This document shows positions 31,062-64,000 of a DNA stretch of 64,000 nucleotides, in pieces. Below the pieces are notes generated by a model. It was not told the DNA's origin, made no database searches, and saw nothing but the letters and a program-made list of their open reading frames with translations. The stretch lies in assembly GCA_965637545.1 (NCBI GenBank), contig OZ281495.1, positions 25,110,001 through 25,174,000 on the forward strand, written 5' to 3'. This stretch comes from Phallusia mammillata. Its lineage: Eukaryota. The position numbers and the translations under genes were made by a program. Each line of letters starts with the position of its first letter. Within the stretch, counting starts at the first letter, position 1.

Positions 31062-31161
31062 ATGGATGGTGGACTTATTGCCCTCTTTGTTATTCTCGGG
31101 GTGCAGTTTGCAGTGGTTGCTGGCATGGTAACCTACCTGCTGTACCGCCGACAACCCAAAA
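31062..31161 (+). CDS. Gene A exon 1: single transmembrane signal-anchor
   Basis: [33 protein letters not shown] followed by a strong phase-1 donor A|gtaagt; in-frame TGA upstream of the ATG; the basic cluster continues in exon 2 (KKPKLK). Confidence 0.75.
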
Positions 31162-34100
31162 GTAAGTTGTGTTCGTTATTTATTTATTTTTTGTCGCAAT
31201 TTTTGAGTTGAATCATTAGTTAATTGATTTGTAAAAACTTTGTCTGTTTCTTTCGTGGTTGTACAAAAGTAGTGTTCAACAAACTGTTGAATATTTATAA
31301 AAAAAAAAATTAACGTTTTTAAATCAAAATAAGTGTTAAAACTCCACAATTTGTTTGGCTACATTAAACGCCAAGTGCACCTTGCCATATTAGGTTATGT
31401 GTGTTATTGTATGGTACCATGGTGACGCCTTTATAAAACGAGTTTTCAGTAAGTGCATCACTTAACGAAGATTTGCAATATAGTTGTGCTACGCGAAAAA
31501 CTTAGTTTAATCTTTTTTGAAGACGTTTATATTTTTTAAACATTGCCCTAAAATAGTAAATGCACCACGCTTTTCGCAAAACAAAAACTGGAGTGCCGTT
31601 GGATGGCTACACTAGCCAATACGGCCGATCTCTCGTCACCAGCTGCACTGATGAGACCTTGTAGGTCGAAACAGTGTGCACTGTCTGCAGCTTATCATTT
31701 ATTGGCTCTATGCTTCTACAAAAACTTTCACAAATTTATTTGTCATGAAAATTAGCATGCCAATATTAAAAATGTTGAACCCGGCGTGATTTTGAATGGC
31801 AGTGATAAAAGAAAATCATTTGTCACACGTTCAACCTAAGATACCCTTCACTTATTTCATTTGTTCGGCTCAAAGCATGTAATTTACTTCTGGCCATGCA
31901 AAAATCACCGCGTTTCAAGCAGCTTCAATAACAATACAAGTACGAATGATATCAACTGACAGAAATGCGCCTGGGGCAGCAAGATCATAAATGTCAGTTC
32001 CGATTTATTTACACTGATGACAACTACGGTTATTGCACTACCTCGACATAACGCCCTTAAGTATTAGAACATGTAATTTCACTACCCTCAAAATCAAATT
32101 AAAAGTAAACTTTTTTTGAATTTTGTCGGTTATAAGCATTTATCTGTAAAACATACATAGCAAACACAGGTGTTTTCATTACTTGTTTTACGTGTTAGCG
32201 CTAACCTAGAAAATCTTTTTTACGGAGGACTCGCTTATCAGTATTCGCGAAACAATAACTATTGGATGGGTTTAACAAATTTATATATTGTGCAGAAAAA
32301 CCCAAACTAAAACCGGACAACAATGTGATAACATCATACGAGGATCCGCATGACAGCAATGGCCACGTCCTCATTGATATCGATGTGAGTGAAAGGTTGT
32401 TTATCTTGTGGGGCCAAGGGTCACGGCTTTTTCCTGCTCTGGACATAGTTACAGTCTTGACCTGTCGTTTTGGTATCTCGAAAGAAAGTCTTTCGAACAT
32501 TTCTTAGTATATCAAGTACAAACGTTGCACAAATCAAAGCAGCCACGGCGATAGCGTACCAAATAGCTCGGGGATAAATAGAATTGGGAACTAGATATGT
32601 ATCATTTGTGTTAGCCACTCTAAGCGCTTCTTGGTATTTGAATGAATCATTGTTGGATAGAGTAAAGATGGATGGTTCGTTAGGTGTCGGGAGATATGTA
32701 TAGTAGTGGGTACATATTTCATGGTGGTGAAAGCTCTAATAAGAAATATACCATCCAGTATATTGAAAATAGAAAAACGGTTGTCAAAATACCATGTTTT
32801 ACACAAGTTTAAACTCGTGTCTGATTTTTTAAGTTCAAAAGTTGCTGAAATAAATGCCTTACGATTACTTGGTTACTTGGGATTGGTAAGGCGCCGTCAC
32901 ATTTAACAAAAGGCTATTTGGACATATTTAAATCTAAATTTTTCCCAAATACACATGCCAAAACTATTGCCTTAAATGTATATTTTCTACATTCCTATAC
33001 CACCGTATCTTGAAACCATGTCTTGTGTTTATTACCAGGAGAAGGATCCTAATGACATCCCTAGCTCTTCTACGTCATCATCACCAGGTAGGCGTAATGT
33101 TTCTCGAAATCAATATTTCAAAGTGCGTAAGTTGGAAGGCGGACCCCGCAATCGAGGAATAACCAACAATTCGACCCAGCTTGGCCTTCCCACAGACAAA
33201 AATGATTAGTATTTGTGCTGGGGGCTGATAACAAGTCTATGTAGGTTATTAGCGTCCTATGTTTTGACGCGGCGCGGCCACGACCCGTTATTATGTAATT
33301 AGCGAAAGTACTTCCCATCGACGTAATGAATTGTAATTCTGGACAGCCATGGTGGTTTTGCACAAAGAAGGGGAAATCTTCTGCATTAAGGGGAAACTAT
33401 TTTACGTAAAACTGAACAGGTGTTCTTTTTAATATATTTTGCATTTCTTTTTTTGAATTTCGAATCGCATAAGCGCAATAAACTTCACAAAGCCACAGAT
33501 AATGTTAGGCTAATTCTTGTATAGCACTACATCAACAAATTGTAATTTAACTGTATCGATATGATTTGCCCCGCAGACTCAAAATATCTGTTCACTTTTT
33601 ATAAGCGTTCCTTTTTTACAAACCTCTTTTTACATCAACATTTATGCTTGTAGCAATACAATTTTGCCCCAAAGCCAAAACACCCGCTACTGAGTATCTA
33701 TTTGCCAAAGCCAACCTGCGCTTACACGTAATGCGCTTAATACAGATCAGCATGGCGAAAACAAACCGTAAATTTTTTAAAGGATATTGTCTGCAGTTGA
33801 AGCGTAGGCGATTAACTTGATCATTGCTTTTAGCCCGTGAGCTATTTATCGCGATCGAATTGTTTCCGACGTCCGCAGTGATGATAAAGGAATTCCTGTT
33901 GTTATTATTTTAATATCAACTACCGCTTTTGTACAATTTATTTTGATCGTTTGGCAGTTACGGTTTTTCAGGTTCAAACGTTTTACATTTTACAAGTCAA
34001 AACTAAATGCCTTGATTCGGGTTTCTGCTTATTTAAGAGTTGCGCAAATAACTTGGGGCAATTATTGTTTGATAAAGATTAAACTGACCAAGAGCTTTAC

Positions 34101-37100
34101 CACATACTTTGATTGGGATTTAACACATTTCAATAAGAATTAACAAGCTCGTCAGTAGCAAACAATTTTACAACTTTCCACTTTACTTTTGAAGGGAGAA
34201 CAGGTTGATAAGGCATGCCGCACCATTTAAAAATACGTTTCAAAAGTTATGGGGCTATTCAACGCAAATAGTGATGTTCAACTTATTGTGTTTCACAATT
34301 ATTTCATTTATAATTGCATATGTGACATACGCTCGTTGCTATGCGGTCCAAGAACTGTGTCATTTCATCGCATCGTATCAATTTGTATCATAAATTCCAA
34401 TCACTGCAATTGATGGACCGTGTGCAACCGATCAGCCAAGTTCGTGCAAAACGCACTTTTCCTCCAGCTACGGCATTTGTACGCTTTGTAATGCACCAAC
34501 GAGCTTGCTTGTAACGCCCCAGGCTCGAATGCGGTTTTTATAAGAGTCCTGTGGTCGACTGAATGTAAACTTTCGAATGTTGTTGCAGATCCAAAGAAGA
34601 AACTGATCGATGAGGACGAAATTGTACCGTCGGCTCCTATGCCGGAAGAAGAGCACGCACCACCTTACACTGTTGTCGATGTTAGTTGTTGCTAATTAGC
34701 CAGCAGTAACAAATTTGATTTGAAACCAACCTACATATAAGTTTACATGAAAAATGTTTCTTGAAATAACAAACCTAACATGTGTTGATATCAATTAGAA
34801 ACATGTAATCATATACATCAATCCCAATTCTCTTAAATCGTAATACAAGAGACCACTCAAACTTTGGTAACAACCATTTACATACTTAAACAAAAATATG
34901 TGTAAAACATTTGATCAAACTTTGGCAGAATAGTGACACTAACGTGTTTAAAACTCTTGCTAATCAACTTCCAAAACCAGCAACAAAAAGATGTCATATG
35001 TATTTAGGTTGACGAAGACCCGGTGACTGTAGTAATAGTGTCGCCAAGCAAGGAAGCACCTCCTCTAGCTCCTTATACCGACCAAGATACTTTACCACGC
35101 ACGAAACCAGCAGAAGTATCCAGTTCTTCATCAAGCTCAAGTGAAGATGAAGTCCAAGAGGAACCGATACCAAAGATTGTTGCCCAACGACCAATAGATG
35201 ATCGCCAGCCTCCTTTTGAATCTTCATTATCATCTTCATCATCATCAGCATCTTCACCAGAGAGCGAGATTGATGAAGCTCCTCCAGTGATTGTTGTTCC
35301 TCCCCTTAAAGAGCCAATTCAAAGCAGCACCAGCTCGTCGTCCTCTTCAGAAGACGATGAGCCAGTACAACCAGTTTTGAAACCTTTAATCGAGGAGAAA
35401 ATTCCAACGTCTTCTTCGTCTTCTTCCGAGAGCGAAAGGGAAGCTCCAATTCAAAAAGTCCCCATTGCAAAAGAACGAAAGATAAAAAGATCCATAGCAG
35501 AGTCGACAACGTCTGAAGAGCTGGTGTCAGTCAAGAAGAGTTCAGATCACAGCTCATATGATGAGGAGATCGTTGTTTTGGAGGAGGGGACCGCAAGTGT
35601 GTCTTCTGGTGACGGCGACGCCGTGGTTGACAAGCAGAGAAGGAGAGTGCGCCGCAAAATCATTCGAAACAAGGAGATCATTGAGCTTATTGAAGAGGAG
35701 AACATCGTCATTAAGAAGCACAAAAAGGTGTCCAACGTCACACGAGAGGAGTCGAGTTCATCTTCGTCCACATCGTCGTCCGAGGAAGAGCAGAAGATAA
35801 AGAAGAAAAAGAAAAAGAAGAGGAAGGTGAAAAAGATTCAAGCGCCTCCCACGTCTTCAAGCTCGTCATCAGAGAGCTCAGAAGAGGAAGAAATAATAAT
35901 TACAACTACCCATAAGGAAGTCCAAGCTACCCAGACAAGACCCCTTTCATCTTCTTCGACTGTATCTCTGCCTGATGCAGGAACAAGGGAAATTGCTACT
36001 TCTACCGACATTCCACAGGAGTTGGTCAGCGACGGAAAATCGTTTTCAAGCGAGTACTATTATGACGTCACCAACCAAGAGCATGGACGTCACATCACCA
36101 CGACGATTATCGAGAGGACCACGTCACCGAACCGCGACGTCACAAAGCACCACGTTGTTCGTGAACTAGTGAAAGATGACGTCGTTGTTCGTGAACTCGT
36201 GAAAGAAGACGTTCATACAAGTTGGTCATTCGTGGTTTATTTGCTCGAAGGTATGTTTACTTATTGTTTGTGTTTACAGCAACAACAGCCACGGCAATGA
36301 CTACATCAGAATCAGAAGATGAGGCCAAAATGCATCATGTCGCCATCGGTGTCCAAACAGGTGACATATATTTGTCTTTGATTATAGTTTTTACAATACA
36401 CTTGTTTGCGATTTTGCTTATTTTGTTCTTCTTTGGCAGACAAAATGTCATCAAGCTCTTCATCGTCATCTTCTGAAGATGAGATTTCCGAAACAAGGGT
36501 AATAATTTATCATAAGGTTTTTATAAAAGAAAATCATGTTTTACTTTCTTAGCACAAACTAAGTGAAAACACACAACCTTTGTTGCGAGCTTTTTCTATC
36601 TTGCATCCCCAGGTTGACGGTCAGACGCAAACTCACTCGGTAACAATGATGGCGAAGGACTTTGACAAGAAAGTTGAAATAGAACAAGATAAGAAATACA
36701 CGTCCTCTGTAACTGCCATTGTAACTAAGGAACGAGTTGTAGAACCGGAGGAAAGGCGGTAAGCATTAAAATATTATATAATTTGGATCAATTGGTTTCT
36801 TGAACGTTTTTTTCCAGGTAGTAATGATTTTTTTCTGAATATTAATTCTACAATAATTTCGATACCTGTTGTCAATTATTATCTTGATAATCTTTAACCA
36901 ATATTTTAAGCAGAAAATCTCGCGCCGATATTCGATTTACATCAGGCTGGAACCGACAGGTGACCTTGGATAACCTCTACCAAGCCGGTATCGTGACGGA
37001 GACTACAGTGACAGAACTGGAAACAGGTTTGTTGAAATTTAACATACACATCTAACTACTACATGATCACTCAACATTAGCAAAAGTAGAAAATGGCTCT

Positions 37101-40100
37101 CACCGGAAGTAAAGTGATGGAAGTTTAAGTCCTTAACTTTTTGTGTTGATTGTTGCAACAGGGAAAATTTCGGAAGCAGATGTTGAGAAGTCACTTCAGT
37201 TGTATTTGGTCGGCAACGAACCTATTGCTGGGCTTATAATGGAAGGCACTGGAGAGAAGATTTCCATATTTGACGCTTATAAGATGGGTCTTATCAGACG
37301 AGGTAATTGCAAGGTCTACTTATGTCTGAACTCTGAAGCAATAAACTTATAATGAGAAAGTCCCACAGGTAGATTTTAATTGGTTAAAATATGATCGGTA
37401 TTCGATAATTTGCTTTCAGGTACTTCAATCAGCTTGTTGGAAGCACAAGCTGCAACAGGTCGCATTATCGACCCTAGAAATGCAAATCGAATGTCGGTAA
37501 AAGAAGCGTCGGAAAATAAAATCATTGACCGACAGTTTGAGGCAGTTCTAACAAGGTAACACATGTTACATTCATAGAGTAAACAAAAGAGTAAATAGAA
37601 AAAATACTTTAGCAGACAGACATGTGGCTAAATTACGTAAGCTACTTAGTGAACAAAATTCCATTAAACCTACTTTTTCTTAGAGCTGAACGGGCAGTGA
37701 TAGGATACAGGGCTCGAAGAGGAGACGAAATGTTGTCGTTGTTTCAAGCAATGAACAATGGTCAAGTGGTGGAAAACCACGGAATTAGGTTACTAGAGGC
37801 GCAAATAGCCACTGGTGGTGAGTTTTTTGCGTTACAAAAGTGTATGTTGCTGGTGACAAAACCCATACAAACATGTTTTGTTTTTCAGGAATCGTTGATC
37901 CAAAGGCCAACCATCGTCTACCGGTGGAGGTCGCCTTTGAGCGTGGTCTTTTCGATGAAAGGCTGCATAATATTCTGGAAGATCCATCGGATGATACAAG
38001 AGGATTCTTTGACCCCAACACAGGGGAAAATCTTACTTATCAAGAACTGATGGAAAGGTTATTACCAAGAGTGTTACAGTGACTTTACAAACTTTTAAAA
38101 ATTCCAAAATTGTTTTTGACCAGACATTTTCTAACTTTGATAAAAGTGCTGTTACCAAAAATGATTACTTGAAACCTTGCATTCAGATGCATTATCGATG
38201 AAGATACAGGGCTGAGGTTGCTTCCGTTTAAGGCGAAACCCGCTGAAAAAGTTGCCGAACCATCTGAGGAAGTTGTTACAACGAGTGAGGCCCAAGTTGT
38301 ACAACAAGGTGATTTTCGATTTACTTTATGCTTTGGGAAATCTTTGTGCATTTACCATTTTTGCTGGACGTGAAAAAATGGTGTGTTACTCAATTTTTAT
38401 TTTTTTTAAAAAGAACCTAGAAGGACATCATCAGATTCGGATAAGGACAAACGCTATGTATCAGAGGTAATCTTCATGTTTTGTTTCATTGTTCATAAAT
38501 AATTCAAAGATTGTTCCCTATGTTGTGCTTGTCTATTGTTAAACAAATCATCCCCAAAGCCTTTTGTACAATAATCGACATAATTTAAAATAGATTTATA
38601 AAAACTTGTGTTGACTAATATGACATTACCTTTTAGATTTCACAAGATATCAAAAAAGAACAAGAATTGTCAACTACCGTAGTAACCACTGAAGAGATGA
38701 TTGTAACAACTACTAGCCAAGAAAAGCGAAGGTTTGTGTCGATAAAACGTGTCATAGCAAAAGAATGTGTTCGTAATTTAATATTCTTGCAGAAAATCGA
38801 GGAGAGACATTCACTTTATGTCGGGTTGGAATAGGCAAGTTACATTGGAAGATCTATACCAAGCTGGTGTAGTCACTGAGTCCACGATCGAAAAACTTGA
38901 AGGAGGTAAAGTCACAAATTCAAACTGACCACACAAACTTGTCATATATTGAAAGGCAAGCAATTTTTCGAACAGGTGAAATTGAACAGTCTGAGGTCGA
39001 AAAATCATTGGAACAATACTTGGTGGGAGCCGAACCTATTGCTGGGCTGCTTATGTCCGATACAGGAGATAAGATTTCCATTTATGATGCTTGGAAACAG
39101 GGACTTATTAGAAGAGGTGGATAGCCCTATTGAGTCTTTTTTTATATTTACAAACTACAAAATGCTTTCTACTTAACTGAATAGCTGTATAATTCTTTTA
39201 TAGTATCGACAAAATGTAACTATTTTAACAGGAACATCCATCAGTTTACTTGAAGCACAAGCAGCCACTGGTCGCATTATTGATCCTAAGACCGCTAATA
39301 GAATGTCTGTTCATGATGCATCCGAAAGTGGAGTAATTGACAGGCAGTTTGAGGCTGTGTTGACCAGGTATGTACTACAGGCAACTTGTTACCTTGGTCG
39401 GTGGTTAACAACAATTGCTGTGTTTCATTTTGCAGAGCTGAGCGGGCTGTGATTGGATACAGAGCACGCGGTGGAAACGAAACTCTGTCTTTATTCGAGG
39501 CGATGAATCGTGGACTGGTAGTCGAAAATCATGGAATTAGATTACTAGAAGCACAGATAGCTACTGGAGGTACGAATAAAATTACTAAAGCTATCCAAGT
39601 ATAATTTTGGCACCGTTATGTCACTATTTTTTTCATTTTGATGTCTAGGAATTGTGGATCCAAAAGCGAATCACCGTTTGCCGGTAGAGGTCGCCTTTGA
39701 GCGAGGTTTGTTTGACGAGAGGCTGCATGAGATTCTTGAGGATCCGTCGGACGATACAAGAGGATTCTTCGACCCGAACACAGAAGAAAATCTTACCTAT
39801 CTTGAACTAATGGAAAGGTGATCCACTTTGTAACGTCCTTAACGTTAGCTAAGGGCATAAAAATAGACTGACCATTTGTTTTACATAAAAAGTGTGACTG
39901 GTAAGCTGGCCTGTAATGGAGGCCCGAAACCCGGATCGAACATAAAAAATTGGATGAAAAAGTGTTAAGTATTAAATTTACCAGGTTGAAGTTACAACAT
40001 CAATGTGGCTTAGTGTAAAATCACGTCCAAATCAAGCCTTAGCCCGACCTGAAAAGCTGTGGTCCAATTTACAACTTCGATTAAAACACTACAGGCCATT

Positions 40101-46343: not shown

Positions 46344-46491
46344 TTGTTCGTGCAGAATGAAGTCACATAATTTAATTTCCCGTCATGTATACCTTGATTT
46401 TTGTGAACTATTGACTTTTGTACAGTTTTATTGCATGATTAGGTTTAGTGTAGAGTTGGTGTTAGCAATGTTGAGTTCGTAGTGTTCTTCA

Positions 46492-46497: not shown

Positions 46498-46796
46498 TGT
46501 ACTGCGCACAAGACATTGGGTGTTCAATTGTAACTGAAGCTTTAACACAGTCAGTGTGATATATTATAACGACTCGTCAAGCAAACTTAAGCTTCAAATA
46601 CACTACAAAGACCACTAATATACGGTTGTAGTGAACTGAGTCATGTTTTGGGTGCGCCACTTGTGCGTCACCCTCAAGTCTGAGCACACGAAGAAAGCAC
46701 CAGCATGGTCTGTTCATTCTCCATCCGCCAAGCCAGATGAGGAATTACTGCGCAATTTTGCACGGTCCTGTGCCTATTTACAGCTGAGACAGCAGG

Positions 46797-52500: not shown

Positions 52501-52954
52501 TGCAGGATGACGTATGAAAATTTAATTGTCAGTCATGTATAACTTGCTTTTAGTAAACTACTAACTTTTTTGTAGTTTTAATGCATAATTAGGTATGGTG
52601 TAGAGTTGTTAAATTCGTAGATTTTGTCAAATAAATCCTGGGTGTTTATCTATTATAATTGAAGTTGTAACACAGTGCGTGTGATTTATCGTTACAACTC
52701 TTTAAGCAAAGTTAAACTTTAAACACACTGCAAAAACCACCAATACAAGGTTTGAGTGAAGACAGTCATATTTGGGGTGCGCCGATGGTGTTACCATCAA
52801 GTCTGTAGCACCTGTAGCACCTGTAGCACCATCAAGTCTGTAGCACCCGAAAAAAGCACCAGCAATGGTCTGTTCATTCTTTATCGTTCAAGTCAGCTGA
52901 GGGATTTACTTCGCAATTTTGCACGATCGTATGCTCATTTACAGCTGAGATAGC

Positions 52955-55900
52955 ATGATGAGGTGGTCGCTAGTTTTAGTGTTATTGCTTCTAGTGGGAA
53001 ATGCAAACGCTTTACTTTTAGTGACATTGACAGAAGTTGTCGTATTCAGTGTATTTGCAAGTTTATTTATTCTTGCAGTAATTCTCATCGCAGTTCTTGT
53101 GTGCAGGTATATCAAGCAAAGTAAGTGTTTTTAAAATATACTTGTCACTACGTATCGCCAATTGTGCTCTTGTGTATAATCAAACGCAGTGGTTCTCAAA
53201 CTTTTTTATTGTCGGGGCCAAATGTGATTTTTTTAAGTGTGTAGGGAGCCGCAAAAAAACAAAACCTTGAGCAAATCGCTGAAGATTATTACTTTGAAAG
53301 CTAAAATAGCAATGTTTGGTGGTTTTCTGAGGTCTGGTGCGAGCCGCAGAATAAGTAGTTGGGAGCCGCATGCGGCCCCAAAAACCGAGTTTGAGAACCA
53401 CTGATCAAACGTATCCAAGAGAAAACAAATCAAACGTTTTGGATCGAAAACAAATAGAAGAAGATAATGTATTTTTGTTAAAAAAATGTGTTTGTTTGTA
53501 AAACATTTGATTTCCGGTGTTTAAAATGAGCCGTTTTAATGGCTTTTTAAAATTGCTTCGTGTAATGCATAATTTTGGACGAGAGAAACTTGTCATAAGC
53601 TGCACCAGAGTTGTAAGTTGTAAGGCTTCGGGTTTTTTTAAAATACGGGCTGGAATCGGACCTAATGTCAAACAGCCCTAAAACGTCTTGCTTTAAGGCC
53701 AATTCTCTATTGTGTTTGTTGTCTTGGTCTATCCTGAAGCTTTAATGAAAAGGCAGGTCAATCAAACTTTCGGGCCTAACCCGCGGGCTTCTCATTTCGG
53801 GTTCGGGCCGGGTTTCGGGCTTGTATTTTCGGGTTCTGACCGGGTTCGGTCTCCGATTTCAGGCCCGTTTACAACTCTAAGCTGAACTGTAATAGATTAG
53901 TAGTCTTCTACTCCCAAAACCTAAACTGCACCTTTGAATTGTAAAATTCGACAAAATGTGGTATTATTCTATTGAAAGACAAGTTTGCGACAACTCATTG
54001 TATAGTAGCTTGGTAACACTGTCACATTATTTATTCAACATTGTAGCAACTATGCGACACAACAACACCTTACCGTTAAATTTAAAAATGTGAAGTCAAT
54101 TTCCCATTTTTTTGTTTACAGAATGTGGAGATGGACTTGGGCGTGATGACGATGCTTTGAAAGGGGTGGTCACGGACGGCCGAAGGCCATACAGTATCAC
54201 GGTATGTTAATGTGTTGTTGGTCTGTGTACAGGGGGTTGCGCAGTCTAAACCACTCGTAGAAGTTTCGTCGCAGACATGTTTCCCTGCGTGCAAACAACC
54301 ATAAGAGGTCGGGAGTTTTTGTGCTTCGATAGGAATTCGGCGCTTTTTAATTGAAGCCGTCTCGCAGTTTGCAGCGGTTTCCGCGCCAAAGCGGAAAGTA
54401 CCGTGCCAAACATGGACACCTTATAGAAACCAGTTCACCGTTTGCACTTTGCATGTTAATTTTCAACCTAAAACGTTTGGGGGAAACTGGCACAAAAATA
54501 GTGCAGACATATTGAATTTATTAAAACACTTCTTTTCATGTAAAACCTATTATAAAGCTGTATACTACCAAGCCAGCAAAGCCACATAAATGCATAGGTT
54601 GTAGCTGAGCAGTTATGTTCTCACTGTATGTAACAAAACAGAACACTTTTTACAGCTAAAGAATTTCGATGCTGGGGAGGAAGCATCTCTGTCGTCTGTG
54701 TCGTCCCTTTCCGAAGACGCTGCAAATTCAAAATTACAACAAGAAAACGCTCCAAAAATCCAAATATATTCGAAACTTAACAAATCATCTCGCAGTCAAA
54801 TTCCTGACATTACCGACAATTATTCAAAAGATGAAACATTGATTTCAAAAGTGGATAACACTAGTGAGGTATGATAAAAACGAAGTAAATGTATTTTGTA
54901 ACAAAAGGCCATCTTTTTAAAATCAATTTAAATCACTCTCTATGCACTCAGTGGACTTTTCGTTTCTTTGCTTGTGACTTGCTGAATATACATCGGCGGC
55001 ACAGATAATACTTTATTTTGTTGAGAACATGTCAACACTCAATTGAACATCTGAAATAAAACAATGCCAAAATTCCCTAAAAAAAACAACGTTGCAACAA
55101 GTGATTTAACTCGTAAACTGTACTTGTTTGCAGCCAAAGGAAATCCATCATTATTATCACTACAAGACAGATCAACCTGAAGATTCAGCACAAAAAGTGC
55201 TCGAGAAAGAAAAAATGCAACATAAACAAATGCAAAGAAAAGGGCAACAGATATCCTCAGCGTCGCCGCTTCCCAGCAGCGATTTTCCCAACTTGGAGAT
55301 TGAACACAAAACAGCCCTGCAAACAGCACCTAAATCAAGTGGAAAGCTGAAACCTAGTTTAAACATCGACAGTGATACAGATTCGAGTGATGGGGAGAAT
55401 TTTATGCACAACAAACCTCCAGCGGTAAGCAAAATTTGCGTTTTAAAACGTCGACATTAATTTAATAAGTTTTCATAAGAAACTTAGAAGGCATTGACAT
55501 GACAGCTTTGCTTTACACTGTGGGCATCTCACATCCGTTTAGTTTTAGCATGTTGCACTCGATAAAGTACGAGTAAAATCTTTAAAAATAATTTTAATGT
55601 GCAAAAATTTAAGAAGATTAACGGTGGACGACAATTTAAAGTCTACATTTACTTTATTGCAGATCTACAACCAGCAACAGCGACAAAATCCTTCGGTTGT
55701 GAAACATTTGCATGATAAACATCCCGAGGTCGGTTGTTTAACATGTGGATAAACATTTTTGGTCGTTTAAATCCTGTTTACAAAGTATTTGCTTTTGTAC
55801 ACTTTTTATTATCTAACACAAAGAGACAAATCTAGCACTAAAACGTTTTTTTGTGTGTGTACAGCTAAAATACAACAGGGCAGAGATCAACACAGAGGGG

Positions 55901-58900
55901 GAAAACTCTGGAAAGCTGCCTATTGACAACGCTTTAACAGAGGTGGTCTCAGACGAGCAAAACCCAAAGATAACCACAGTATGTTCGTGTTGTTGTTGCG
56001 TGCTCTTTTAGCATGGTTTGTTTTTGACAGTTGGCTTGCTCAGTTGAAATCACTCGTAGTTTTCCCCACAAACATGTTTTCCTCAATGCAGCGTGCAGAC
56101 GACCGTAACGGTTCAGAAGTTTTTGTGCTTCGATAAGAATTCGGCACTTCCAAAATTAGAGTATGCTTGCAGTTTGTGTCGTGTTTCTGCGGAAAGAACC
56201 AAGGCAAACCTGGAAACCTTATAGAAGCCAGTTCATTGTTTCCAGTTTGGATGTTAATCTTTAACCTAAAACGTTTTGGGCAAAATTTGCACAAAAATAG
56301 TGTGGACATTTTGGATTTATCAAAAAAAAACGTTACATTTTAACACCATTATACAACTCCCATACTATATACCAAGGCAAAAGTGCATACAACTGTACAG
56401 GTTGTTTCATTGTATGGAACAAAACAAACAATTTTTCAGCTAAAGAATGTCGGTGCTGGTGAGGAAGCATTTCAGGCGACTGTGTCTTTACTTGCCGAAG
56501 ACGCTTCAAATTCGAAATTACAACAAGAAAACGCCCCAAACAACCAATGTGTTTTGAAATCTCACGAATTATCTCGCAGTCAAAACCCTGACTTCGCCAA
56601 AAACTATTCAAAAGATAACCTACTGGGTATTGAAAAGAAAAACACCAGTGATGAGGTACAATGAAAACCTAATGGATTTTATTGCACTAAAAAATTTCCC
56701 GCAACTTGGTCATACTTTAAAAGCAATTCTAATCAATCCCGATGCCCTCAGTGGAAATTTCTGCTTTGGTCGAAATGTACATCTTTGCTTGTGTTTTGCT
56801 AAACATACATCAACAGAATAGTTTATAACTTTAGTCTGATTAAAAGATTTCAACATTTTTGTTGTTGCAAGATCAATTAAGCTTGCCAGCTGCGTCCAAA
56901 TAATTGTTTAATTATTTTATGAAACACAATCACCCAAGCATTTTCGCCTATTTTTAAAAAATCATCTAAAATAAACGATGCTAACCTAACATCTAATATA
57001 AATAACGTTTTCACAAGTCACTTAACTGGCGAAATGTACTTATTTACAGCTGAAGGAAATCCATCATTATAGTGACTACAAGATAAATCAACCGGAAGAT
57101 TCAGCACAAAAAGTGCTTGAGAAAGAACACATGCATAGTGAACAAATACAAAGAAAAAATCAACATGTATCCTCGGCGTTGCCGCTCTTCAGCAGCGATC
57201 TTCCCAACTTGGAGATTGAACACAAAACAGCCCTGAAAACAGCATCTAAATCAAGTGGAAAGTTGAATCCTAATTTAAACCTCGACGGTGATACAGATTC
57301 AAGTGATGAGGAGAATTTTATATACAACAAACCCAAAGCGGTAAGGAGAATTTGCGTTTTAAAATGCCAACATACATTATAATCTGTTTTGATAAATAAA
57401 GGCATTGACATAATAGCTTTACAGCCAGGAGAAAGCCACATATCATCACGGTATGTTTGTGTTGTTGTTGTGCGCTCCTTCAGCAGGGTTTGTTTTTGAC
57501 AGTTGGCTTGCTCAGTCAAACCACTCGCAAAAGTTTCCACACAGACATGTTTTCCTCAATGCAGCAGGTAAACGACCGTAATCGGTCACTAATTTGTTTG
57601 CTCCGATAGGAATTCGACACTTGCAAAATTAAAGTATGCTTGCAGTTTGTTTCAAGTTTCTGCGGGGTACCGAGGCAAACCTGGAAAACATTATAGAAGC
57701 CAGTTTATCGTTTTGCAGTTTATATGTCTTAACCTAAAACGTTTTGAGCAAACTTTGCGCAAAAATCGTGTGGACATATTAAATTTTAAAAAAAGAAACA
57801 TTACATTTATCAACATAACACCCTTTATACAGCTGTACACTTTATACCACGGCAAATGTACATAGGTAGTAAATCAGCTCTTTGTGTTCTCATTGTATGA
57901 AACAAAACGAACATTTTTTAAAGTTAAAGAATTTTGATGCCGAAGAGGATGCATCTCTGGCGACTGTGTCTTTACTTTCCGAAGACGCTGCAAATTCGAA
58001 ATTACAACAGGAAAACGTTCCAAACAACCAACATGTTTCGAAATCTCACGAATCATCTCGCAGTCAAACCCCTGACATTGCCGACAACTATTCAAACGAT
58101 GATGCATTGGATTTTGAAAAGAAAAACGCTAGCAAGGTAAAATAAAAAATGAGTAAATATTTTTATCGTTTGCAGTTTACATGTTAATCTTTTACCAATG
58201 AACAAAAATATTGTGGACATATTGGAATTATAAAAAAAACATTACAATTTATCAACATAACACCCAATATACAGCTCTACACTATACACAAAGGAACATA
58301 CAGGTGTTAGGTCGTAAATAGGCTATTTATGTTCTCATTGTATGGATCAAAACCAACAATTTTTTAAAGCTAAAGAAATTCGATGCTGGGGAGGAAGCTT
58401 CTCTGGCGTCTGTGTCTACACTTTCGGGAAACGCTGCAAATTCGAAATTACAACAAGAAAAATCTCCCAACAACCAACGTGATTCGAAATCTCACGAATC
58501 ATCTAGTAGTCAAATCCCTGACATTGACGACAACTATTCAAAAGACGACCTAGTGGTTATTGAAAAGGAAAACACTAGCAAGGTGAAATAAAAACTGAGT
58601 AAATATTTTTGCACTACAAAATTTCTTACAACTTGGTCACACTTCAAAAACAATCCTAATCAATCTCGATGCCCTTAGTGGAATTTTCGTGCTTTGGTCG
58701 GAATGTACATTTTTGCTTATGTTAAAAGTGCAATTTGATGTAAGATTACCTAAATGTAGCAGTTGCGTCCAAATTGTTGAAATATTTTATGAAACAAAAA
58801 ACAACCAAGTACTTCGGCCTTTTTTGATAAATAATTTAAAATAACACATTGCGACTGTACGTGTTTGCAGGCAAAGGAAATTCATCATTATTACCACTAC

Positions 58901-61900
58901 CAGATAGATCAACCTGAGGATTCAGCACAAAAAGTGCTTGAGAAAGAACACAAGCATAATGAACAAATACAAGGAAAGGGGCAGCAGCTTTCCTGTGAAT
59001 CGCCGCTTCCCAGCAACGATTTTTCGAACTTGAAGCTTGAAGACAAAACAGCGTTGGAATCAGCACCTAAACCAAGTGGAAAGTTGAATCCCAATTTAAG
59101 CCATGACGGTGATACAGATTCAAGTAATGAGGAGAATTTTATATACAACAAACCCAAAGCGGTAAGGAGAATTTGCGTTTTAAAATGCCAACATACATTA
59201 TAATCTGTTTTGATAAATAAAGGCATTGACATAATAGCTTTACAGCCAGGAGAAAGCCACATATCATCACGGTATGTTTGTGTTGTTGTTGTGCGCTCCT
59301 TCAGCAGGGTTTGTTTTTGACAGTTGGCTTGCTCAGTCAAACCACTCGCAAAAGTTTCCACACAGACATGTTTTCCTCAATGCAGCAGGTAAACGACCGT
59401 AATCGGTCACTAATTTGTTTGCTCCGATAGGAATTCGACACTTGCAAAATTAAAGTATGCTTGCAGTTTGTTTCAAGTTTCTGCGGGGTACCGAGGCAAA
59501 CCTGGAAAACATTATAGAAGCCAGTTTATCGTTTTGCAGTTTATATGTCTTAACCTAAAACGTTTTGAGCAAACTTTGCGCAAAAATCGTGTGGACATAT
59601 TAAATTTTAAAAAAAGAAACATTACATTTATCAACATAACACCCTTTATACAGCTGTACACTTTATACCACGGCAAATGTACATAGGTAGTAAATCAGCT
59701 CTTTGTGTTCTCATTGTATGAAACAAAACGAACATTTTTTAAAGTTAAAGAATTTTGATGCCGAAGAGGATGCATCTCTGGCGACTGTGTCTTTACTTTC
59801 CGAAGACGCTGCAAATTCGAAATTACAACAGGAAAACGTTCCAAACAACCAACATGTTTCGAAATCTCACGAATCATCTCGCAGTCAAACCCCTGACATT
59901 GCCGACAACTATTCAAACGATGATGCATTGGATTTTGAAAAGAAAAACGCTAGCAAGGTAAAATAAAAAATGAGTAAATATTTTTATCGTTTGCAGTTTA
60001 CATGTTAATCTTTTACCAATGAACAAAAATATTGTGGACATATTGGAATTATAAAAAAAACATTACAATTTATCAACATAACACCCAATATACAGCTCTA
60101 CACTATACACAAAGGAACATACAGGTGTTAGGTCGTAAATAGGCTATTTATGTTCTCATTGTATGGATCAAAACCAACAATTTTTTAAAGCTAAAGAAAT
60201 TCGATGCTGGGGAGGAAGCTTCTCTGGCGTCTGTGTCTACACTTTCGGGAAACGCTGCAAATTCGAAATTACAACAAGAAAAATCTCCCAACAACCAACG
60301 TGATTCGAAATCTCACGAATCATCTAGTAGTCAAATCCCTGACATTGACGACAACTATTCAAAAGACGACCTAGTGGTTATTGAAAAGGAAAACACTAGC
60401 AAGGTGAAATAAAAACTGAGTAAATATTTTTGCACTACAAAATTTCTTACAACTTGGTCACACTTCAAAAACAATCCTAATCAATCTCGATGCCCTTAGT
60501 GGAATTTTCGTGCTTTGGTCGGAATGTACATTTTTGCTTATGTTAAAAGTGCAATTTGATGTAAGATTACCTAAATGTAGCAGTTGCGTCCAAATTGTTG
60601 AAATATTTTATGAAACAAAAAACAACCAAGTACTTCGGCCTTTTTTGATAAATAATTTAAAATAACACATTGCGACTGTACGTGTTTGCAGGCAAAGGAA
60701 ATTCATCATTATTACCACTACCAGATAGATCAACCTGAGGATTCAGCACAAAAAGTGCTTGAGAAAGAACACAAGCATAATGAACAAATACAAGGAAAGG
60801 GGCAGCAGCTTTCCTGTGAATCGCCGCTTCCCAGCAACGATTTTTCGAACTTGAAGCTTGAAGACAAAACAGCGTTGGAATCAGCACCTAAACCAAGTGG
60901 AAAGTTGAATCCCAATTTAAGCCATGACGGTGATACAGATTCAAGTAATGAGGAGAATTTTATGGACAACAAATCCCAACCGGTAAGCAAATTTTGCGTT
61001 TTATAATGCCAACATTGGTATAACCTGTTTTAATAAATGAAGGCATTGACATGACAGCTTAACAGACGGGCAAAATCCACACATTACCGCAGTATGTTTG
61101 TGTTGTTGGTGCCCGTTCCTGCAGCAGGGTTTGTTTTTGACAGTTGGCTTGCTCAGTCCAAACCACTCGCAAAAGTTTCCACACGGACATGTTTTCCTCA
61201 ATGCAGCAGGTAAACGACCGTAATCGGTCACTAATTTGTTTGCTCCGATAGGAATTCGACACTTGCAAAATTAAAGGATGCTTATAGTTTGCAGCGGTTT
61301 GCGGAAAGTACCGAGTCAAGCCTGGAAACCTTATAGAATCCGGTTTATCGTTTGCAGTTTATATGTAAATCTTAACCTAAAACGTTTTGGGCAAACTTTG
61401 CGCAAAAATAGTGTGGACATATTGAATTTATAAATAAAAAAACGTTACATTTATCAACATAACACCCTTTATACAGCTGTACACTTTATACCACGGCAAA
61501 GGTACATAGGTATTAAATCAGCTCTTTGTGTTCTCATTGTATGAAACAAAACAAACATTTTTTAAAGTTAAAGAATTTTGATGCCGAGGAGGAAGCATCT
61601 CTGGCGACTGTATCTTTACTTTCCGAAGACGCTGCAAATTCGAAATTACAACAAGAAAACATTCCAAACAACCAACATGTTTCGAAATCTCACGAATCAT
61701 CTCGCAGTCAAACCCCTGACATTGCCGACAACTATTCAAACGATGATGCATTGGATTTTGAAAAGAAAAACGCTAGCAAGGTAAAATAAAAAATGAGTAA
61801 ATATTTTTATCGTTTGCAGTTTACATGTTAATCTTTTACTAATGAACAAAAATAGTGTGGACATATTGGAATTATAAAAAAAACATTATATTTTATTAAC

Positions 61901-64000
61901 ATAGCACCCAATATACAGCTCTACACTATATACAAAGGAACATACAGGTGTTAGGTCGTAAATAGGCTATTTATGTTCTCATTGTATGGATCAAAACCAA
62001 CAATTTTTTAAAGCTAAAGAAATTCGATGCTGGGGAGGAAGCTTCTCTGGCGTCTGTGTCTACACTTTCGGGAAACGCTGCAAATTCGAAATTACAACAA
62101 GAAAAATCTCCCAACAACCAACGTGATTCGAAATCTCACGAATCATCTAGTAGTCAAATCCCTGACATTGACGACAACTATTCAAAAGACGACCTAGTGG
62201 TTATTGAAAAGGAAAACACTAGCAAGGTGAAATAAAAACTGAGTAAATATTTTTGCACTACAAAATTTCTTACAACTTGGTCACACTTCAAAAACAATCC
62301 TAATCAATCTCGATGCCCTTAGTGGAATTTTCGTGCTTTGGTCGGAATGTACATTTTTGCTTATGTTAAAAGTGCAATTTGATGTAAGATTACCTAAATG
62401 TAGCAGTTGCGTCCAAATTGTTGAAATATTTTATGAAACAAAAAACAACCAAGTACTTCGGCCTTTTTTGATAAATAATTTAAAATAACACATTGCGACT
62501 GTACGTGTTTGCAGGCAAAGGAAATTCATCATTATTACCACTACCAGATAGATCAACCTGAGGATTCAGCACAAAAAGTGCTTGAGAAAGAACACAAGCA
62601 TAATGAACAAATACAAGGAAAGGGGCAGCAGCTTTCCTGTGAATCGCCGCTTCCCAGCAACGATTTTTCGAACTTGAAGCTTGAAGACAAAACAGCGTTG
62701 GAATCAGCACCTAAACCAAGTGGAAAGTTGAATCCCAATTTAAGCCATGACGGTGATACAGATTCAAGTAATGAGGAGAATTTTATGGACAACAAATCCC
62801 AACCGGTAAGCAAATTTTGCGTTTTATAATGCCAACATTGGTATAACCTGTTTTAATAAATGAAGGCATTGACATGACAGTTTAACAGACGGGCAAAATC
62901 CACACATTACCGCAGTATGTTTGTGTTGTTGGTGCCCGTTCCTGCAGCAGGGTTTGTTTTTGACAGTTGGCTTGCTCAGTCCAAACCACTCGCAAAAGTT
63001 TCCACACAGACATGTTTTCCTCAATGCAGCAGGTAAACGACCGTAATCGGTCACTAATTTGTTTGCTCCGATAGGAATTCGACACTTGCAAAATTAAAGG
63101 ATGCTTATAGTTTGCAGCGGTTTGCGGAAAGTACCGAGTCAAGCCTGGAAACCTTATAGAATCCGGTTTATCGTTTGCAGTTTATATGTAAATCTTAACC
63201 TAAAACGTTTTGGGCAAACTTTGCGCAAAAATAGTGTGGACATATTGAATTTATAAATAAAAAAACGTTACATTTATCAACATAACACCCTTTATACAGC
63301 TGTACACTTTATACCACGGCAAAGGTACATAGGTATTAAATCAGCTCTTTGTGTTCTCATTGTATGAAACAAAACAAACATTTTTTAAAGTTAAAGAATT
63401 TTGATGCCGAGGAGGAAGCATCTCTGGCGACTGTACCTTTACTTTCCGAAGACGCTAAAAATTCGAAATTACAACAAAAAAACGCTCCAAACAACCAAAG
63501 TGTTTCGAAAACTCACGAATCGTCGCGCAGTCGAATCCCTGACATTGACGACAATTATTCAAAAGATGACCTAGTGGTTATTGAAAAGGAAAACGCCAGC
63601 AAGGTAAAAAAAACTGAGTGAATATTTTTGCACTACAAAAGTCCCCACAATTTGGCGACACTTTAAAAACAATCCTACTTACTCTTGGTCCCCCAGTAAA
63701 ATTTTCGTTCTTTCATCAGAATGCACATCTATGCTTATGTTAAATGTGCCATTTCATACAAGATCACTTAAGCGTAAAAGCTGCGTTCAAATTGTTGAAA
63801 TAATGTTTTTTTAAAAGTTTTAAAACCAAAAACCAAGTATTCCGAGTATTTTTGTCAAATCATTTAAAGTAAAAGTATGCTAACTGTACTTGTTTGCAGC
63901 CAAAGGAAATCCATCATTATTATCACTACAAGATAGATCAACCTAAATGTTACATCTTATTTGCCAGTAATTGCAGATTTCTATTGATTCCCGCATTTCC
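52955..64000 (+). CDS. Gene C (3'-incomplete): paralog of gene B with signal peptide + TM and a tandemly expanded Ser/Glu/Asn-rich tail; no PRD within the window
   Basis: Exons 52955-53120 (MMRWSLVLVLLLLVGNANA-LLLVTLTE-VVVFSVFASLFILAVILIAVLVC-RYIKQ), 54122-54201, 54656-54868, 55134-55424, 55663-55728, 55865-55978, 56440-56655, 57050-57340, then 57924-58136, 58370-58582, 58871-59161, 59745-59957, 60191-60403, 60692-60982, 61568-61780, 62014-62226, 62515-62805, 63391-63603, 63900-?. Open for 1267 codons up to 63603. Confidence 0.75.
53187..53403. mobile_element. hAT-Charlie-type MITE, 217 bp, in gene C intron 1
   Basis: TIRs CAGTGGTTCTCAAAC / GTTTGAGAACCACTG; exact 8-bp TSD ATCAAACG (53179-53186 and 53404-53411); single empty-site copy ATAATCAAACGTT at about 47007-47019 in gene B. 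Confidence 0.95.
53606..53879 (-). mobile_element. hAT MITE of the same family as 13155-13563, in gene C intron 1
   Basis: Ends CAGAGTTGTAA...TTACAACTCTA; the right part is the reverse complement of the 13155 left end; TSD AGCTGCAC/AGCTGAAC (1 mismatch); empty site AAAGCTGAACC at about 47176-47186 in gene B. Confidence 0.88.
57341..63900 (+). repeat. Tandem array of about 3.6 near-identical 1821-1823-bp units, each full unit with three phase-0 exons (213, 213, 291 nt)
   Basis: Homologous exon starts at 57924, 59745 (+1821), 61568 (+1823) and 63391 (+1823); introns are also nearly identical between units. Confidence 0.95.

What the first reader, a model, noticed from the sequence alone, without database searches (positions are those of the whole stretch)
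31062..64000. A three-gene cluster of single-pass membrane proteins sharing a TM first exon: candidate family of membrane-anchored plakins
Genes A, B and C lie in tandem on the same strand and each first coding exon encodes a TM helix and ends in the same phase-1 junction (AAA|gtaagt at 31161, 46950, 53120). A and B both contain PRDs, so the TM+PRD architecture occurs twice with different topogenic signals (signal-anchor in A, signal peptide + TM in B), which argues against a modelling accident. The predicted ectodomains are only a few residues, so these would be scaffolds rather than receptors. The set offers 4 PRDs, 1 PRD and possibly none (C).
Basis: partly seen in the sequence, partly recalled or inferred. 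Interest (0 to 1): 0.85.

Follow-up and report, generated by a model that had tools for sequence, protein, structure and literature searches.

The report
Membrane-anchored plakin-repeat gene cluster
Three neighbouring genes of a sea-squirt-like genome join a single membrane anchor to plakin filament-binding domains, a design found across tunicates but described in no paper I found; it may show how animals without desmosomes tie intermediate filaments to membranes.

Summary
The sequence features are real. AAA|GTAAGT occurs only at 31161, 46950 and 53120, each closing an ATG-started hydrophobic exon in phase 1.

Gene A is proven by RNA. Transcript contigs from two runs join the anchor exon through eight GT..AG introns to the first plakin-repeat exon. 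My model has 37 exons and 1877 aa: an N-terminal anchor, a ~570-aa acidic/serine-rich spacer, four plakin repeat domains (PRDs) and a plakin linker motif.

Gene B (5 exons, 690 aa: signal peptide, ~5-residue ectodomain, transmembrane (TM) helix, acidic spacer, one intronless PRD) is a coherent model. No RNA run holds it, including runs that express A.

Gene C is B's paralogue. After its TM exon come at least 14 intact phase-0 cassette exons. They give a 1207-codon open frame that is still open at the window end, so whether C has a PRD is unknown.

The architecture is not a modelling accident. TM+PRD proteins occur in Ciona, Phallusia, Styela, Clavelina and marine metatranscriptome mRNAs. They fall in all four subclades of a tunicate PRD clade, and the TM exon ends in phase 1 in all six genes examined. 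Databases call them "desmoplakin-like"; I found no paper describing the family.

Binding to intermediate filaments and the target membrane are inferred. The scan's other notes concern this same stretch only.

The parts
31062..31161 (+). Gene A coding exon 1: 33 codons plus 1 nt. Four residues, then a ~24-residue hydrophobic signal-anchor, then RRQPK. Ends AAA|GTAAGT in phase 1.
   Evidence: Sequence. Hydropathy 2.63. RNA contigs begin at 31055/31056 and join 31161 to 32296. 52% identical to residues 4-36 of mRNA-derived P0069.
32296..36758 (+). Gene A exons 2-8: 32296-32384, 33039-33087, 34589-34680, 35008-36220, 36280-36360, 36440-36498, 36613-36758. They encode a basic juxtamembrane stretch and then a ~570-aa acidic, Ser/Thr-rich spacer.
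   Evidence: All seven joints are seen as GT..AG skips in RNA contigs of up to 4 runs. The frame is open with no stop. Composition: D+E 19%, S 17%. No Pfam family in the big exon.
36914..38308 (+). Gene A PRD 1 (aa ~600-862), six exons: 36914-37026, 37162-37302, 37420-37555, 37684-37817, 37889-38057, 38187-38308.
   Evidence: The first exon is joined to exon 8 by RNA. The other junctions were chosen by homology plus GT/AG sites. Pfam Plectin hits. Domain table.
38793..40311 (+). Gene A PRD 2 (aa ~922-1183). Same six-exon layout, preceded by linker exons 38414-38466 and 38637-38731.
   Evidence: Pfam.
40916..42373 (+). Gene A PRD 3 (aa ~1249-1509). Same six-exon layout, preceded by linker exons 40424-40491 and 40756-40850.
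   Evidence: Pfam. PRDs 1-3 are 80-85% identical in protein.
42456..43802 (+). Gene A PRD 4 (aa ~1507-1758). It is divergent and has different intron positions: exons 42456-42651, 42925-43087, 43148-43276, 43349-43540, 43664-43802.
   Evidence: Pfam. In the tree it groups with P0027/P0029, not with PRDs 1-3.
43876..44581 (+). Gene A tail: exon 43876-43933 and last exon 44370-44581. The last exon carries a plakin linker-like motif (44444-44578) and the stop TAG at 44579-44581.
   Evidence: 80% identical to the linker motif of Ciona savignyi P0007. Pfam Plectin E 2.6e-8. The junctions are a model. The CDS of 5634 nt plus a 7-nt leader leaves 284 nt of 3'UTR in the 5925-nt RNA contig.
46797..46950 (+). 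Gene B exon 1: predicted signal peptide (cut after VNA), ~5-residue ectodomain, TM helix. Ends in phase 1 at AAA|GTAAGT.
   Evidence: Sequence. Hydropathy 2.50. Paralogous to C exon 1. Same layout as Clavelina P0054 and mRNA-derived P0084. No RNA evidence.
47433..49171 (+). Gene B exons 2-4: 47433-47512, 48143-48355, 48860-49171. They encode a basic, Cys-containing juxtamembrane stretch and an acidic spacer. Exons 3 and 4 are phase 0-0.
   Evidence: Splice sites and phases read from the sequence. Exon 3 against the C copies gives dN/dS 0.26-0.50. Model only.
49785..51098 (+). Gene B terminal exon: acidic spacer plus one intronless PRD (50340-51095), stop at 51096-51098. The full model is 690 aa.
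   Evidence: Pfam Plectin E 1.1e-36. Desmoplakin 1lm7 E 7.7e-61 and 5dzz second domain. 60-66% identical to tunicate single-PRD proteins. Model.
52955..54201 (+). Gene C exon 1 (52955-53120: signal peptide ending ANA, ~8-residue ectodomain, TM, phase 1) and exon 2 (54122-54201).
   Evidence: Sequence. Hydropathy 3.06. 72-75% nucleotide identity to B's 5' region.
54656..63603 (+). Gene C cassette array: nine exon-3-type exons (213 nt, one of 216) and five exon-4-type exons (291 nt). All are phase 0-0 with AG/GT sites intact. The youngest ~1.82-kb units are 96-99% identical. The array continues past 64000.
   Evidence: All 16 exons join into a 3621-nt open frame with no stop. dN/dS 0.34-1.05 among the C copies; exons are mostly more conserved than their flanks. 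No RNA test was possible.

Best explanation
The stretch holds three tandem paralogous genes of a tunicate family. The proteins are single-pass membrane proteins with almost nothing outside the membrane. Inside the cell they carry a long, acidic, serine-rich and probably disordered spacer, followed by one or more plakin repeat domains of the desmoplakin PRD-B type. Gene A also ends in a plakin linker motif.

Topology follows the positive-inside rule. In A an uncleaved N-terminal signal-anchor is followed by a cluster of Lys/Arg. In B and C a cleavable signal peptide is followed by a second hydrophobic helix and basic, Cys-containing residues. In both cases the spacer and the PRDs lie in the cytoplasm.

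The most likely function is a one-protein tether: the TM helix fixes the protein in a membrane, and the PRDs and linker bind the acidic rod of intermediate filaments through their basic groove. The spacer would set the reach of the tether. Its length varies through duplication of phase-0 cassette exons (C) and of whole six-exon PRD modules (A).

Shown: the sequence features, the splicing of A, and the conservation of the architecture.
Inferred: the splicing and expression of B and C, the topology, filament binding, and which membrane is the target.
For: RNA for gene A:
- Contigs X4 (5925 nt) and X15 (4627 nt) run from 31055/6 through eight GT..AG joints into the first PRD exon. Two further runs support several of the joints.
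- The full A model has 37 exons and 5634 nt with no stop, and its length fits the 5925-nt contig.

Domains:
- Pfam Plectin repeats in A and B; four PRDs in A and one in B.
- B's PRD matches desmoplakin 1lm7 at E 7.7e-61.
- There is only one hydrophobic segment per protein.
- Two of the five envoplakin groove positions needed for vimentin binding stay basic (K1901 and R1952 equivalents are Arg), as in desmoplakin PRD-B (PMC4782060).

Family:
- 14 of the 120 retrieved PRD proteins have an N-terminal TM. All 14 are tunicate or unlabelled; no vertebrate one does, apart from one fish protein flagged for a hydrophobic junk-like C-terminus.
- P0069 and P0084 are complete ORFs on mRNA contigs.
- Exons 1 and 2 of A are collinear with the N-terminus of P0069.
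- TM proteins sit in all four subclades of the tunicate PRD clade.
- The TM exon ends in phase 1 in Clavelina P0054 and P0088 and in Ciona P0117, as in A, B and C.

B and C:
- Phases are consistent. Open frames of 690 and at least 1207 codons have all splice sites intact.
- dN/dS is mostly below 1.
Against: - No indexed RNA run holds B's 4.5 kb. The share of words is 0.00 in 12 listed RNA runs of this species, including X4, which expresses A. C was not testable.
- The closest Ciona B-type database model (P0046) starts without a TM.
- No clear TM exon was found within 10 kb upstream of two other B-type terminal exons, L008 and L010.
- Signal peptide, TM and topology rest on hydropathy and on reading the sequence by eye, not on a predictor.
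- The PRD-B type groove is only moderately basic: three of the five envoplakin groove positions are not basic here.
- Junctions downstream of 37026 in gene A are homology-guided models. The three near-identical PRD modules could be collapsed or skipped in transcripts: the word share was 0.43-0.44, against about 0.58 expected from my model.
- The target membrane is unknown.
Confidence: 0.62

Rival explanations
1. Only gene A is a true TM+PRD protein. B's PRD exon belongs to a cytosolic single-PRD gene that starts downstream of the TM exon, as in the Ciona model P0046. The B and C TM exons with their cassette arrays would then be separate PRD-less genes, or decaying duplicates.
For: No RNA for B. 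P0046 and several B-type proteins have no TM at the N-terminus. No TM exon was recognised upstream of the B-type exons in L008 and L010. Some C cassette pairs have dN/dS near 1.
Against: Most of the TM-less B-type entries are open-frame calls on genomic contigs that start inside the terminal exon. Clavelina P0054, in the same subclade, has signal peptide+TM+PRD and a phase-1 first exon. B's five exons fit in phase into one 690-codon frame. All 14 C cassettes keep their frame and both splice sites.
Confidence: 0.22
2. The proteins are filament tethers, but for an internal membrane (endoplasmic reticulum, nuclear envelope or outer mitochondrial membrane) rather than the cell surface. This applies especially to gene A, whose uncleaved N-terminal anchor followed by a basic cluster resembles signal-anchored organelle proteins.
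For: Precedents exist. The sequence encoded by plectin exon 1b inserts into the outer mitochondrial membrane (PMC2426950). The N-terminal TM of dystonin-a2 localises it to the ER and perinuclear membranes (PMC3279385). A's anchor has 4 residues before it and RRQPKKKPKLK after it.
Against: A's anchor is very hydrophobic (2.63), which favours the ER and secretory route. B, C and many relatives carry cleavable signal peptides plus juxtamembrane Cys and basic residues typical of surface type I proteins. One relative has a potential N-glycosylation site in its mini-ectodomain (P0054).
Confidence: 0.3
3. A and B are one transcription unit: B's phase-0 exons, including its PRD exon, are alternative 3' exons of gene A.
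For: A's exon 43664-43802 ends in phase 0 and B's exons 3-5 start in phase 0. An Ensembl model of Ciona savignyi (P0007) fuses an A-type PRD and linker with a B-type PRD.
Against: RNA runs that hold A hold none of B's words. A has its own in-frame stop directly after the linker motif, and the contig length fits that end. B has its own ATG, signal peptide and an upstream motif conserved with C.
Confidence: 0.05
4. The PRDs of this tunicate clade do not bind intermediate filaments. They would serve another interaction, for example binding other acidic polymers or oligomerising, so the proteins would not be cytolinkers.
For: Three of the five envoplakin groove residues are not basic. Fogl et al. 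note that PRD-A and some PRD-B modules have weakly basic grooves and may have other functions.
Against: Identity to desmoplakin PRD-B is high, and the residues equivalent to K1901 and R1952 are retained. Gene A also carries a linker motif of the kind found between desmoplakin PRD-B and PRD-C (that this linker binds filaments is from my own knowledge).
Confidence: 0.1

Closest known systems
Plectin isoform 1b (vertebrates)
   Same: An alternative first exon encodes an N-terminal membrane-insertion signal, and the C-terminus carries PRDs that bind intermediate filaments. It is therefore a membrane-inserted plakin tether (PMC2426950).
   Different: Plectin keeps the actin-binding domain, plakin domain and coiled-coil rod (>4000 aa) and targets the outer mitochondrial membrane. 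The window's proteins have only anchor, disordered spacer and PRDs, and in B and C a cleavable signal peptide.
Dystonin/BPAG1 isoform 2 (dystonin-a2)
   Same: An N-terminal TM domain decides membrane localisation of a plakin-family cytolinker (PMC3279385).
   Different: It is a giant spectraplakin, and the neuronal a-isoforms act mainly on microtubules and actin. It localises to the ER and nuclear envelope, and there is no minimal TM-spacer-PRD layout.
Desmoplakin C-terminus (PRD-B, linker; PDB 1lm7, 5dzz)
   Same: This is the best solved-structure match to the PRDs here (E 7.7e-61, alignment over ~230 residues). Gene A also has the RRVVIVDP-type linker motif.
   Different: Desmoplakin reaches the membrane indirectly, through plakoglobin/plakophilin and desmosomal cadherins. 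It has no TM, and it has a plakin domain and a rod.
Epiplakin
   Same: A protein made of PRDs and linkers only, without plakin domain or rod. Fish epiplakin-like proteins are the top-scoring database hits.
   Different: It is cytosolic with no TM. EPPK1 homologues were reported absent from Ciona (PMC8782857). The tunicate PRDs form their own clade.
Unnamed tunicate database models ('desmoplakin-like', 'plectin-like', 'uncharacterized'): Ciona XP isoform X2 and LOC100182972, Phallusia A0A6F9DAT3, Styela, Clavelina LOC143449392, and a Clavelina entry with a PDZ domain
   Same: Same family and same architecture: N-terminal TM (with or without signal peptide), spacer and a C-terminal PRD. The first exon ends in phase 1.
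   Different: All have a single PRD. None shows the four-PRD A form or the cassette-expanded C form. They lie dispersed rather than in a tandem cluster in the three loci inspected.

Membership tests
Plakin-repeat proteins (Pfam PF00681, PRD fold) | A PRD of ~4.5 plectin repeats recognisable by profile and by similarity to solved PRDs | tested here: met
   PF00681 hits in 12 gene-A open frames (11 at or above the gathering score) and in B's terminal exon (E 1.1e-36). 1lm7 E 7.7e-61, 5dzz E 2.3e-103. Four full domains in A and one in B.
Canonical plakins (plectin, desmoplakin, BPAG1, envoplakin, periplakin) | A plakin domain (spectrin repeats with SH3) and usually a coiled-coil rod N-terminal to the PRDs | tested here: not met
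   No Pfam family in A's 430-codon spacer frame or in B's exon 2-4 frames. Everything between anchor and PRDs is low-complexity acidic/Ser-rich sequence. The small A exons 2-4 and 6-8 were not scanned separately.
Plakin-repeat proteins as filament binders | Basic groove residues shown to be needed for vimentin binding (envoplakin R1895, K1901, R1914, R1952, K1994) | tested here: inconclusive
   In B's PRD the K1901 and R1952 equivalents are Arg; the other three are V, P and L. Desmoplakin PRD-B shows the same pattern (residues from PMC4782060). Binding itself is not testable here.
Single-pass membrane proteins | One hydrophobic helix of about 20 residues with flanking charges that obey the positive-inside rule | tested here: met
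   Best 19-residue hydropathy 2.63 (A), 2.50 (B) and 3.06 (C). No second such segment in A or B. Basic clusters lie on the C-terminal side. Hydropathy only; no dedicated TM predictor was available.
Type I membrane proteins with cleavable signal peptide (B and C) | An n-h-c signal peptide with small residues at -3 and -1, followed by a stop-transfer helix | tested here: inconclusive
   Read by eye: h-region, then V-N-A (B) and A-N-A (C). The same layout occurs in P0054, P0084, P0086, P0090 and P0092. No SignalP-type tool was run.
Tunicate TM+PRD family (proposed here) | The TM is encoded by the first coding exon, ends in phase 1, and lies on the same mRNA as a PRD of the tunicate clade | tested here: met
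   A: RNA joints. Phase 1 in A, B, C, P0054, P0088 and P0117. mRNA contigs P0069 and P0084. Clade membership. For B and C the shared mRNA is a model only.

The most novel reading that the evidence does not exclude
Tunicates are reported to lack desmosomes. They may use an old, diversified family of minimal TM-spacer-PRD proteins as direct anchors between intermediate filaments and membranes. One polypeptide would then do the job of the vertebrate chain of cadherin, armadillo protein and desmoplakin, or of integrin/BP180 and plectin. The acidic spacer would be an evolvable tether whose length is set by duplication of exon cassettes and PRD modules, and the different N-terminal signals would send paralogues to different membranes.
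Probability: 0.35. Interest if true: 0.8.

Novelty: new variant of a known kind. Interest (0 to 1): 0.6.

Why it matters
Plakins are textbook peripheral linkers: they reach membranes through other proteins. Desmosomes are regarded as a vertebrate invention absent from our nearest chordate relatives (PMC2905707).

A conserved tunicate family that welds a membrane anchor directly to filament-binding PRDs would answer a concrete question: how non-vertebrate chordates attach keratin-like filaments to membranes. It would also show that the PRD-B module and linker existed as a free-standing, shufflable unit before vertebrate plakins diversified. And it would provide a naturally minimal tether, useful for dissecting PRD-filament binding.

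It is directly testable in Ciona, where orthologues exist and electroporation and CRISPR are routine.

Against this, the sequences are already in public databases, and the function is still inferred.

Tried and rejected
- **Tandem Repeats Finder** on 46-64 kb found nothing, because its longest period is 500. A self-BLAST revealed the ~1.8-kb units instead.
- **Whole-library HMMER search** with A's 404-aa acidic exon, meant to recover the full-length natural protein: 0 hits.
- **Word-index search** with the N-terminal 90 residues of P0069, meant to find more A-type anchors: only P0069 itself.
- **ESM Atlas search** with P0084: only low-scoring small type I membrane proteins and no relatives.
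- **Search for a TM first exon** upstream of B-type terminal exons in L007, L008, L009 and L010: nothing convincing.
- **Synteny:** 10-kb flanks of Clavelina P0054 and P0088 and of Ciona P0117 hold no second PRD gene. P0046 is not on record for a locus look-up.
- **Automatic exon chaining:** my own dynamic-programming exon-chaining script (a DP chainer) over-extended exons wherever tblastn alignments ran through stop-free introns. I replaced it with anchor-peptide junction enumeration.
- **Hammerhead in intron 1:** Rfam at gathering score finds no hammerhead. Only weak hits of 22 and 18.5 bits appear.
- **The 9-mer as evidence:** I rejected the triple AAA|GTAAGT by itself as evidence of common origin, because the count is within chance and AAA is simply a juxtamembrane Lys codon next to a consensus donor.

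Full report
**Setting.**
The window is AT-rich (about 61% A+T) and has no N runs. It carries short GT..AG introns of 59-155 nt in several places. Two connexin genes lie on the minus strand upstream. Its plakin-repeat sequences are closest to Ciona, Clavelina, Styela and Phallusia proteins. I therefore treat it as a tunicate, probably an ascidian. The organism itself is coded in the tools.

**The observation.**
AAAGTAAGT occurs three times, all on the + strand, putting the exon ends at 31161, 46950 and 53120. Fourteen of 100 shuffles give three or more matches, so the motif count alone means nothing. Each site, however, terminates an ATG-started open frame in phase 1 that encodes a strongly hydrophobic helix.
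- In A, four residues precede a ~24-residue anchor, which is followed by RRQPK and then more Lys.
- In B and C, a short hydrophobic h-region ends in V-N-A or A-N-A. Then come 5-8 residues, a second and longer hydrophobic helix, and a basic, Cys-containing stretch.
- B and C are obvious paralogues, including ~60 nt upstream of the ATG.

Pfam finds Plectin repeats in many open frames between 37.1 and 44.6 kb, and in the 452-codon frame at 49740-51095.

RNA runs of the same species hold 27-44% of the sampled words of 35008-44600. I laid four of them on 31040-37039.
- A 5925-nt contig (X4, depth 52) and a 4627-nt contig (X15) start at 31055/31056, seven bases before the ATG.
- They skip 31161>32296, 32384>33039, 33087>34589, 34680>35008, 36220>36280, 36360>36440, 36498>36613 and 36758>36914. 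Every skip has GT..AG ends. Two other runs support several of the joints.
- The joined frame is open through 609 codons.

Downstream of 37026 I had no reads left. I placed the junctions by anchoring on conserved peptides and listing all frame-compatible GT/AG pairs. Three PRD modules share an identical six-exon layout, separated by two small linker exons. A fourth, divergent PRD has different intron positions. The last exon carries a plakin linker-type motif, 80% identical to one in Ciona savignyi P0007, and is followed directly by TAG.

The model has 37 exons, 5634 nt and 1877 aa. With the 7-nt leader it leaves 284 nt of 3'UTR in the 5925-nt contig, so the length is consistent. One caveat: the word share (0.43-0.44) is lower than the ~0.58 my model predicts. 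Polymorphism, collapse of the near-identical modules, or module skipping may contribute.

**Gene B.**
Five exons fit in phase: 46797-46950, 47433-47512, 48143-48355, 48860-49171 and 49785-51098. Together they give 690 aa: signal peptide, mini-ectodomain, TM, KCKDGRRRG, an acidic spacer (22% D+E) and one intronless PRD.

The PRD matches desmoplakin 1lm7 and the second domain of 5dzz. From my own knowledge I take these to be PRD-B. The E-values are 7.7e-61 and 2.3e-103 for the whole chains.

No RNA run holds this stretch. The twelve listed RNA runs of the species, including X4, score 0.00. Only two runs of unknown kind, probably DNA, hold it. B is thus a coherent but unverified model.

**Gene C.**
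Exon 1 (52955-53120) and exon 2 (54122-54201) parallel those of B. After them come repeated copies of B's exons 3 and 4: nine copies of 213 nt (one of 216) and five of 291 nt. Every copy keeps an AG acceptor, a GT donor, phase 0-0 and an open frame. All 16 exons join into 3621 nt without a stop, and the frame is still open at the window end.

The youngest ~1.82-kb units are 96-99% identical. Older copies differ by 15-24% in nucleotides. Their dN/dS is 0.26-0.50 against B and 0.34-1.05 among themselves. Exon identity mostly exceeds the identity of the flanks. This fits weakly constrained coding exons of a disordered spacer. Whether C ends in a PRD cannot be read from this window.

**The architecture recurs across tunicates.**
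Of the 120 PRD proteins retrieved with B's terminal exon, 14 have a hydrophobic helix within the first ~60 residues. All 14 are tunicate or unlabelled marine sequences. They include:
- Ciona desmoplakin-like X2 and LOC100182972;
- a Phallusia entry;
- a Styela plectin-like entry (P0113); a second Styela entry (P0082, desmoplakin-like) has a weaker hydrophobic N-terminus that fell below the threshold;
- three Clavelina entries, one with signal peptide+TM+PDZ+PRD;
- several metatranscriptome proteins with signal peptide, a ~10-residue ectodomain, TM and a polybasic stretch.

P0069 and P0084 are complete ORFs on uninterrupted mRNA contigs. The N-terminus of P0069 is collinear with exons 1 and 2 of gene A: 52% and 45% identity, with pairwise E-values of 2e-10 and 2e-5.

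A maximum-likelihood tree of 68 PRDs gives a tunicate clade (SH-aLRT 96) with four subclades:
- an A-type subclade, containing A's PRDs 1-3 and P0069;
- a B-type subclade, containing B, Clavelina P0054 and Ciona P0046;
- two further subclades.

TM-bearing proteins sit in all four. In Clavelina P0054 and P0088 and in Ciona P0117 the first coding exon also ends in phase 1 just after the TM. That makes six of six genes examined. The simplest reading is one ancestral TM-exon+PRD gene that diversified, with the N-terminal signals changing afterwards.

Ciona savignyi P0007 fuses an A-type PRD and linker with a PRD that is 77% identical to Ciona P0046. This suggests that the A-then-B gene order is old. 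It rests on a gene model, not on DNA that I could inspect.

**Mechanism.**
The positive-inside rule puts the spacer and PRDs in the cytoplasm in all three genes. By homology, the PRDs and the linker bind the acidic rod of intermediate filaments. Of the five envoplakin groove residues needed for vimentin binding, the K1901 and R1952 equivalents are Arg in B's PRD. The other three are not basic, exactly as in desmoplakin PRD-B, which Fogl et al. class as moderately basic. Multiple PRDs plus a linker (A) should bind more strongly than one PRD (B).

With ectodomains of only a few residues, these proteins cannot adhere to anything by themselves. Most family members other than the A type have one or more Cys at the cytoplasmic end of the TM. 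These are candidate palmitoylation sites; that is inference.

Which membrane is the target remains open. Signal peptides point to the secretory route and the cell surface. A's uncleaved anchor with a basic flank could also serve an organelle, as in plectin 1b and dystonin-a2.

**Known or new.**
Six of the eight full-text searches looked for the architecture, combining plakin, plakin repeat, desmoplakin, Ciona, tunicate, ascidian and transmembrane; none found a description; the other two only retrieved the dystonin-a2 and plectin 1b precedents. One study reports no EPPK1 homologue in Ciona. Another derives human-like plakins from the tunicate-vertebrate ancestor. Desmosomes are said to be absent from non-vertebrate chordates.

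Membrane-inserted plakin isoforms do exist in vertebrates, but as giant proteins that keep their actin-binding domain, plakin domain and rod. I therefore class this as a new variant of a known kind. The sequences are public, under uninformative names.

**Limits.**
There was one reads call of 6000 bases. No TM or signal-peptide predictor was available. I had no access to sequence beyond the window. The paper library is incomplete, and the taxonomic range outside tunicates is untested.

Noticed in passing
window 18274-21236 and 26279-28552, minus strand: Two tandem connexin genes. Pfam Connexin N-terminal halves lie at 20937-21236 and 28259-28552 (E 2e-33 and 6.5e-26). C-terminal halves lie at 19013-19315 and 26906-27154.
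   Followed up: partly
window 31440-31840 (intron 1 of gene A), core 31621-31690 +: The RNA contig depth here is 100-640, against 12-52 on gene A's exons, with many loose ends and several short contigs. This looks like a dispersed, abundantly transcribed repeat. Rfam gives only weak hammerhead hits (RAGATH-1 hammerhead 22 bits, type III 18.5 bits, both far below gathering score), although the CUGAUGAG / CGAAAC / GUC cores are present.
   Followed up: partly
window 43954-44340 (last intron of gene A): About three tandem copies of a ~137-nt unit. The same open-frame peptides recur at 43954, 44109 and 44246. They lie just upstream of the last exon's acceptor.
   Followed up: no
window 46740-46796 and 52900-52954: A conserved motif lies upstream of the B and C start codons and includes TTTACAG about 13-15 nt before the ATG. 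Gene A's RNA contigs likewise begin 2-3 nt after an AG (31052-31053), 6-7 nt before its ATG. This could reflect spliced-leader trans-splice acceptors with very short leaders. No leader sequence was seen.
   Followed up: no
proteins P0054, P0084, P0086, P0092, P0113, P0117, P0120, P0076, P0088; window B and C exons 1-2: Nearly all family members except the A type have one to three Cys at the cytoplasmic end of the TM helix, next to basic residues. These are candidate palmitoylation sites.
   Followed up: no
L003 13041-14177 (Ciona LOC100182972); L007, L008, L009, L010; window 49785-51098: A PRD encoded in one intronless terminal exon is not peculiar to gene B. It is also seen in B-type genes of other tunicate contigs and in a Ciona gene of another subclade. 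A-type modules and Clavelina P0088 are split by introns. The intronless state therefore looks old rather than a recent retrocopy.
   Followed up: partly
L001 10001-14282 (Clavelina P0054): This B-type relative carries an extra region named as a PDZ domain in UniRef, between the TM and the PRD. The family may thus recruit further scaffolding modules. I did not scan it against Pfam myself; the precomputed Pfam column lists only PF00681.
   Followed up: no
window 55910-55978 and 57409-57500: Degenerate copies of exon 2 lie inside the C repeat units. Their phase (1 to 0) does not fit between phase-0 cassettes, so they are probably dead relics of the duplicated segment.
   Followed up: no
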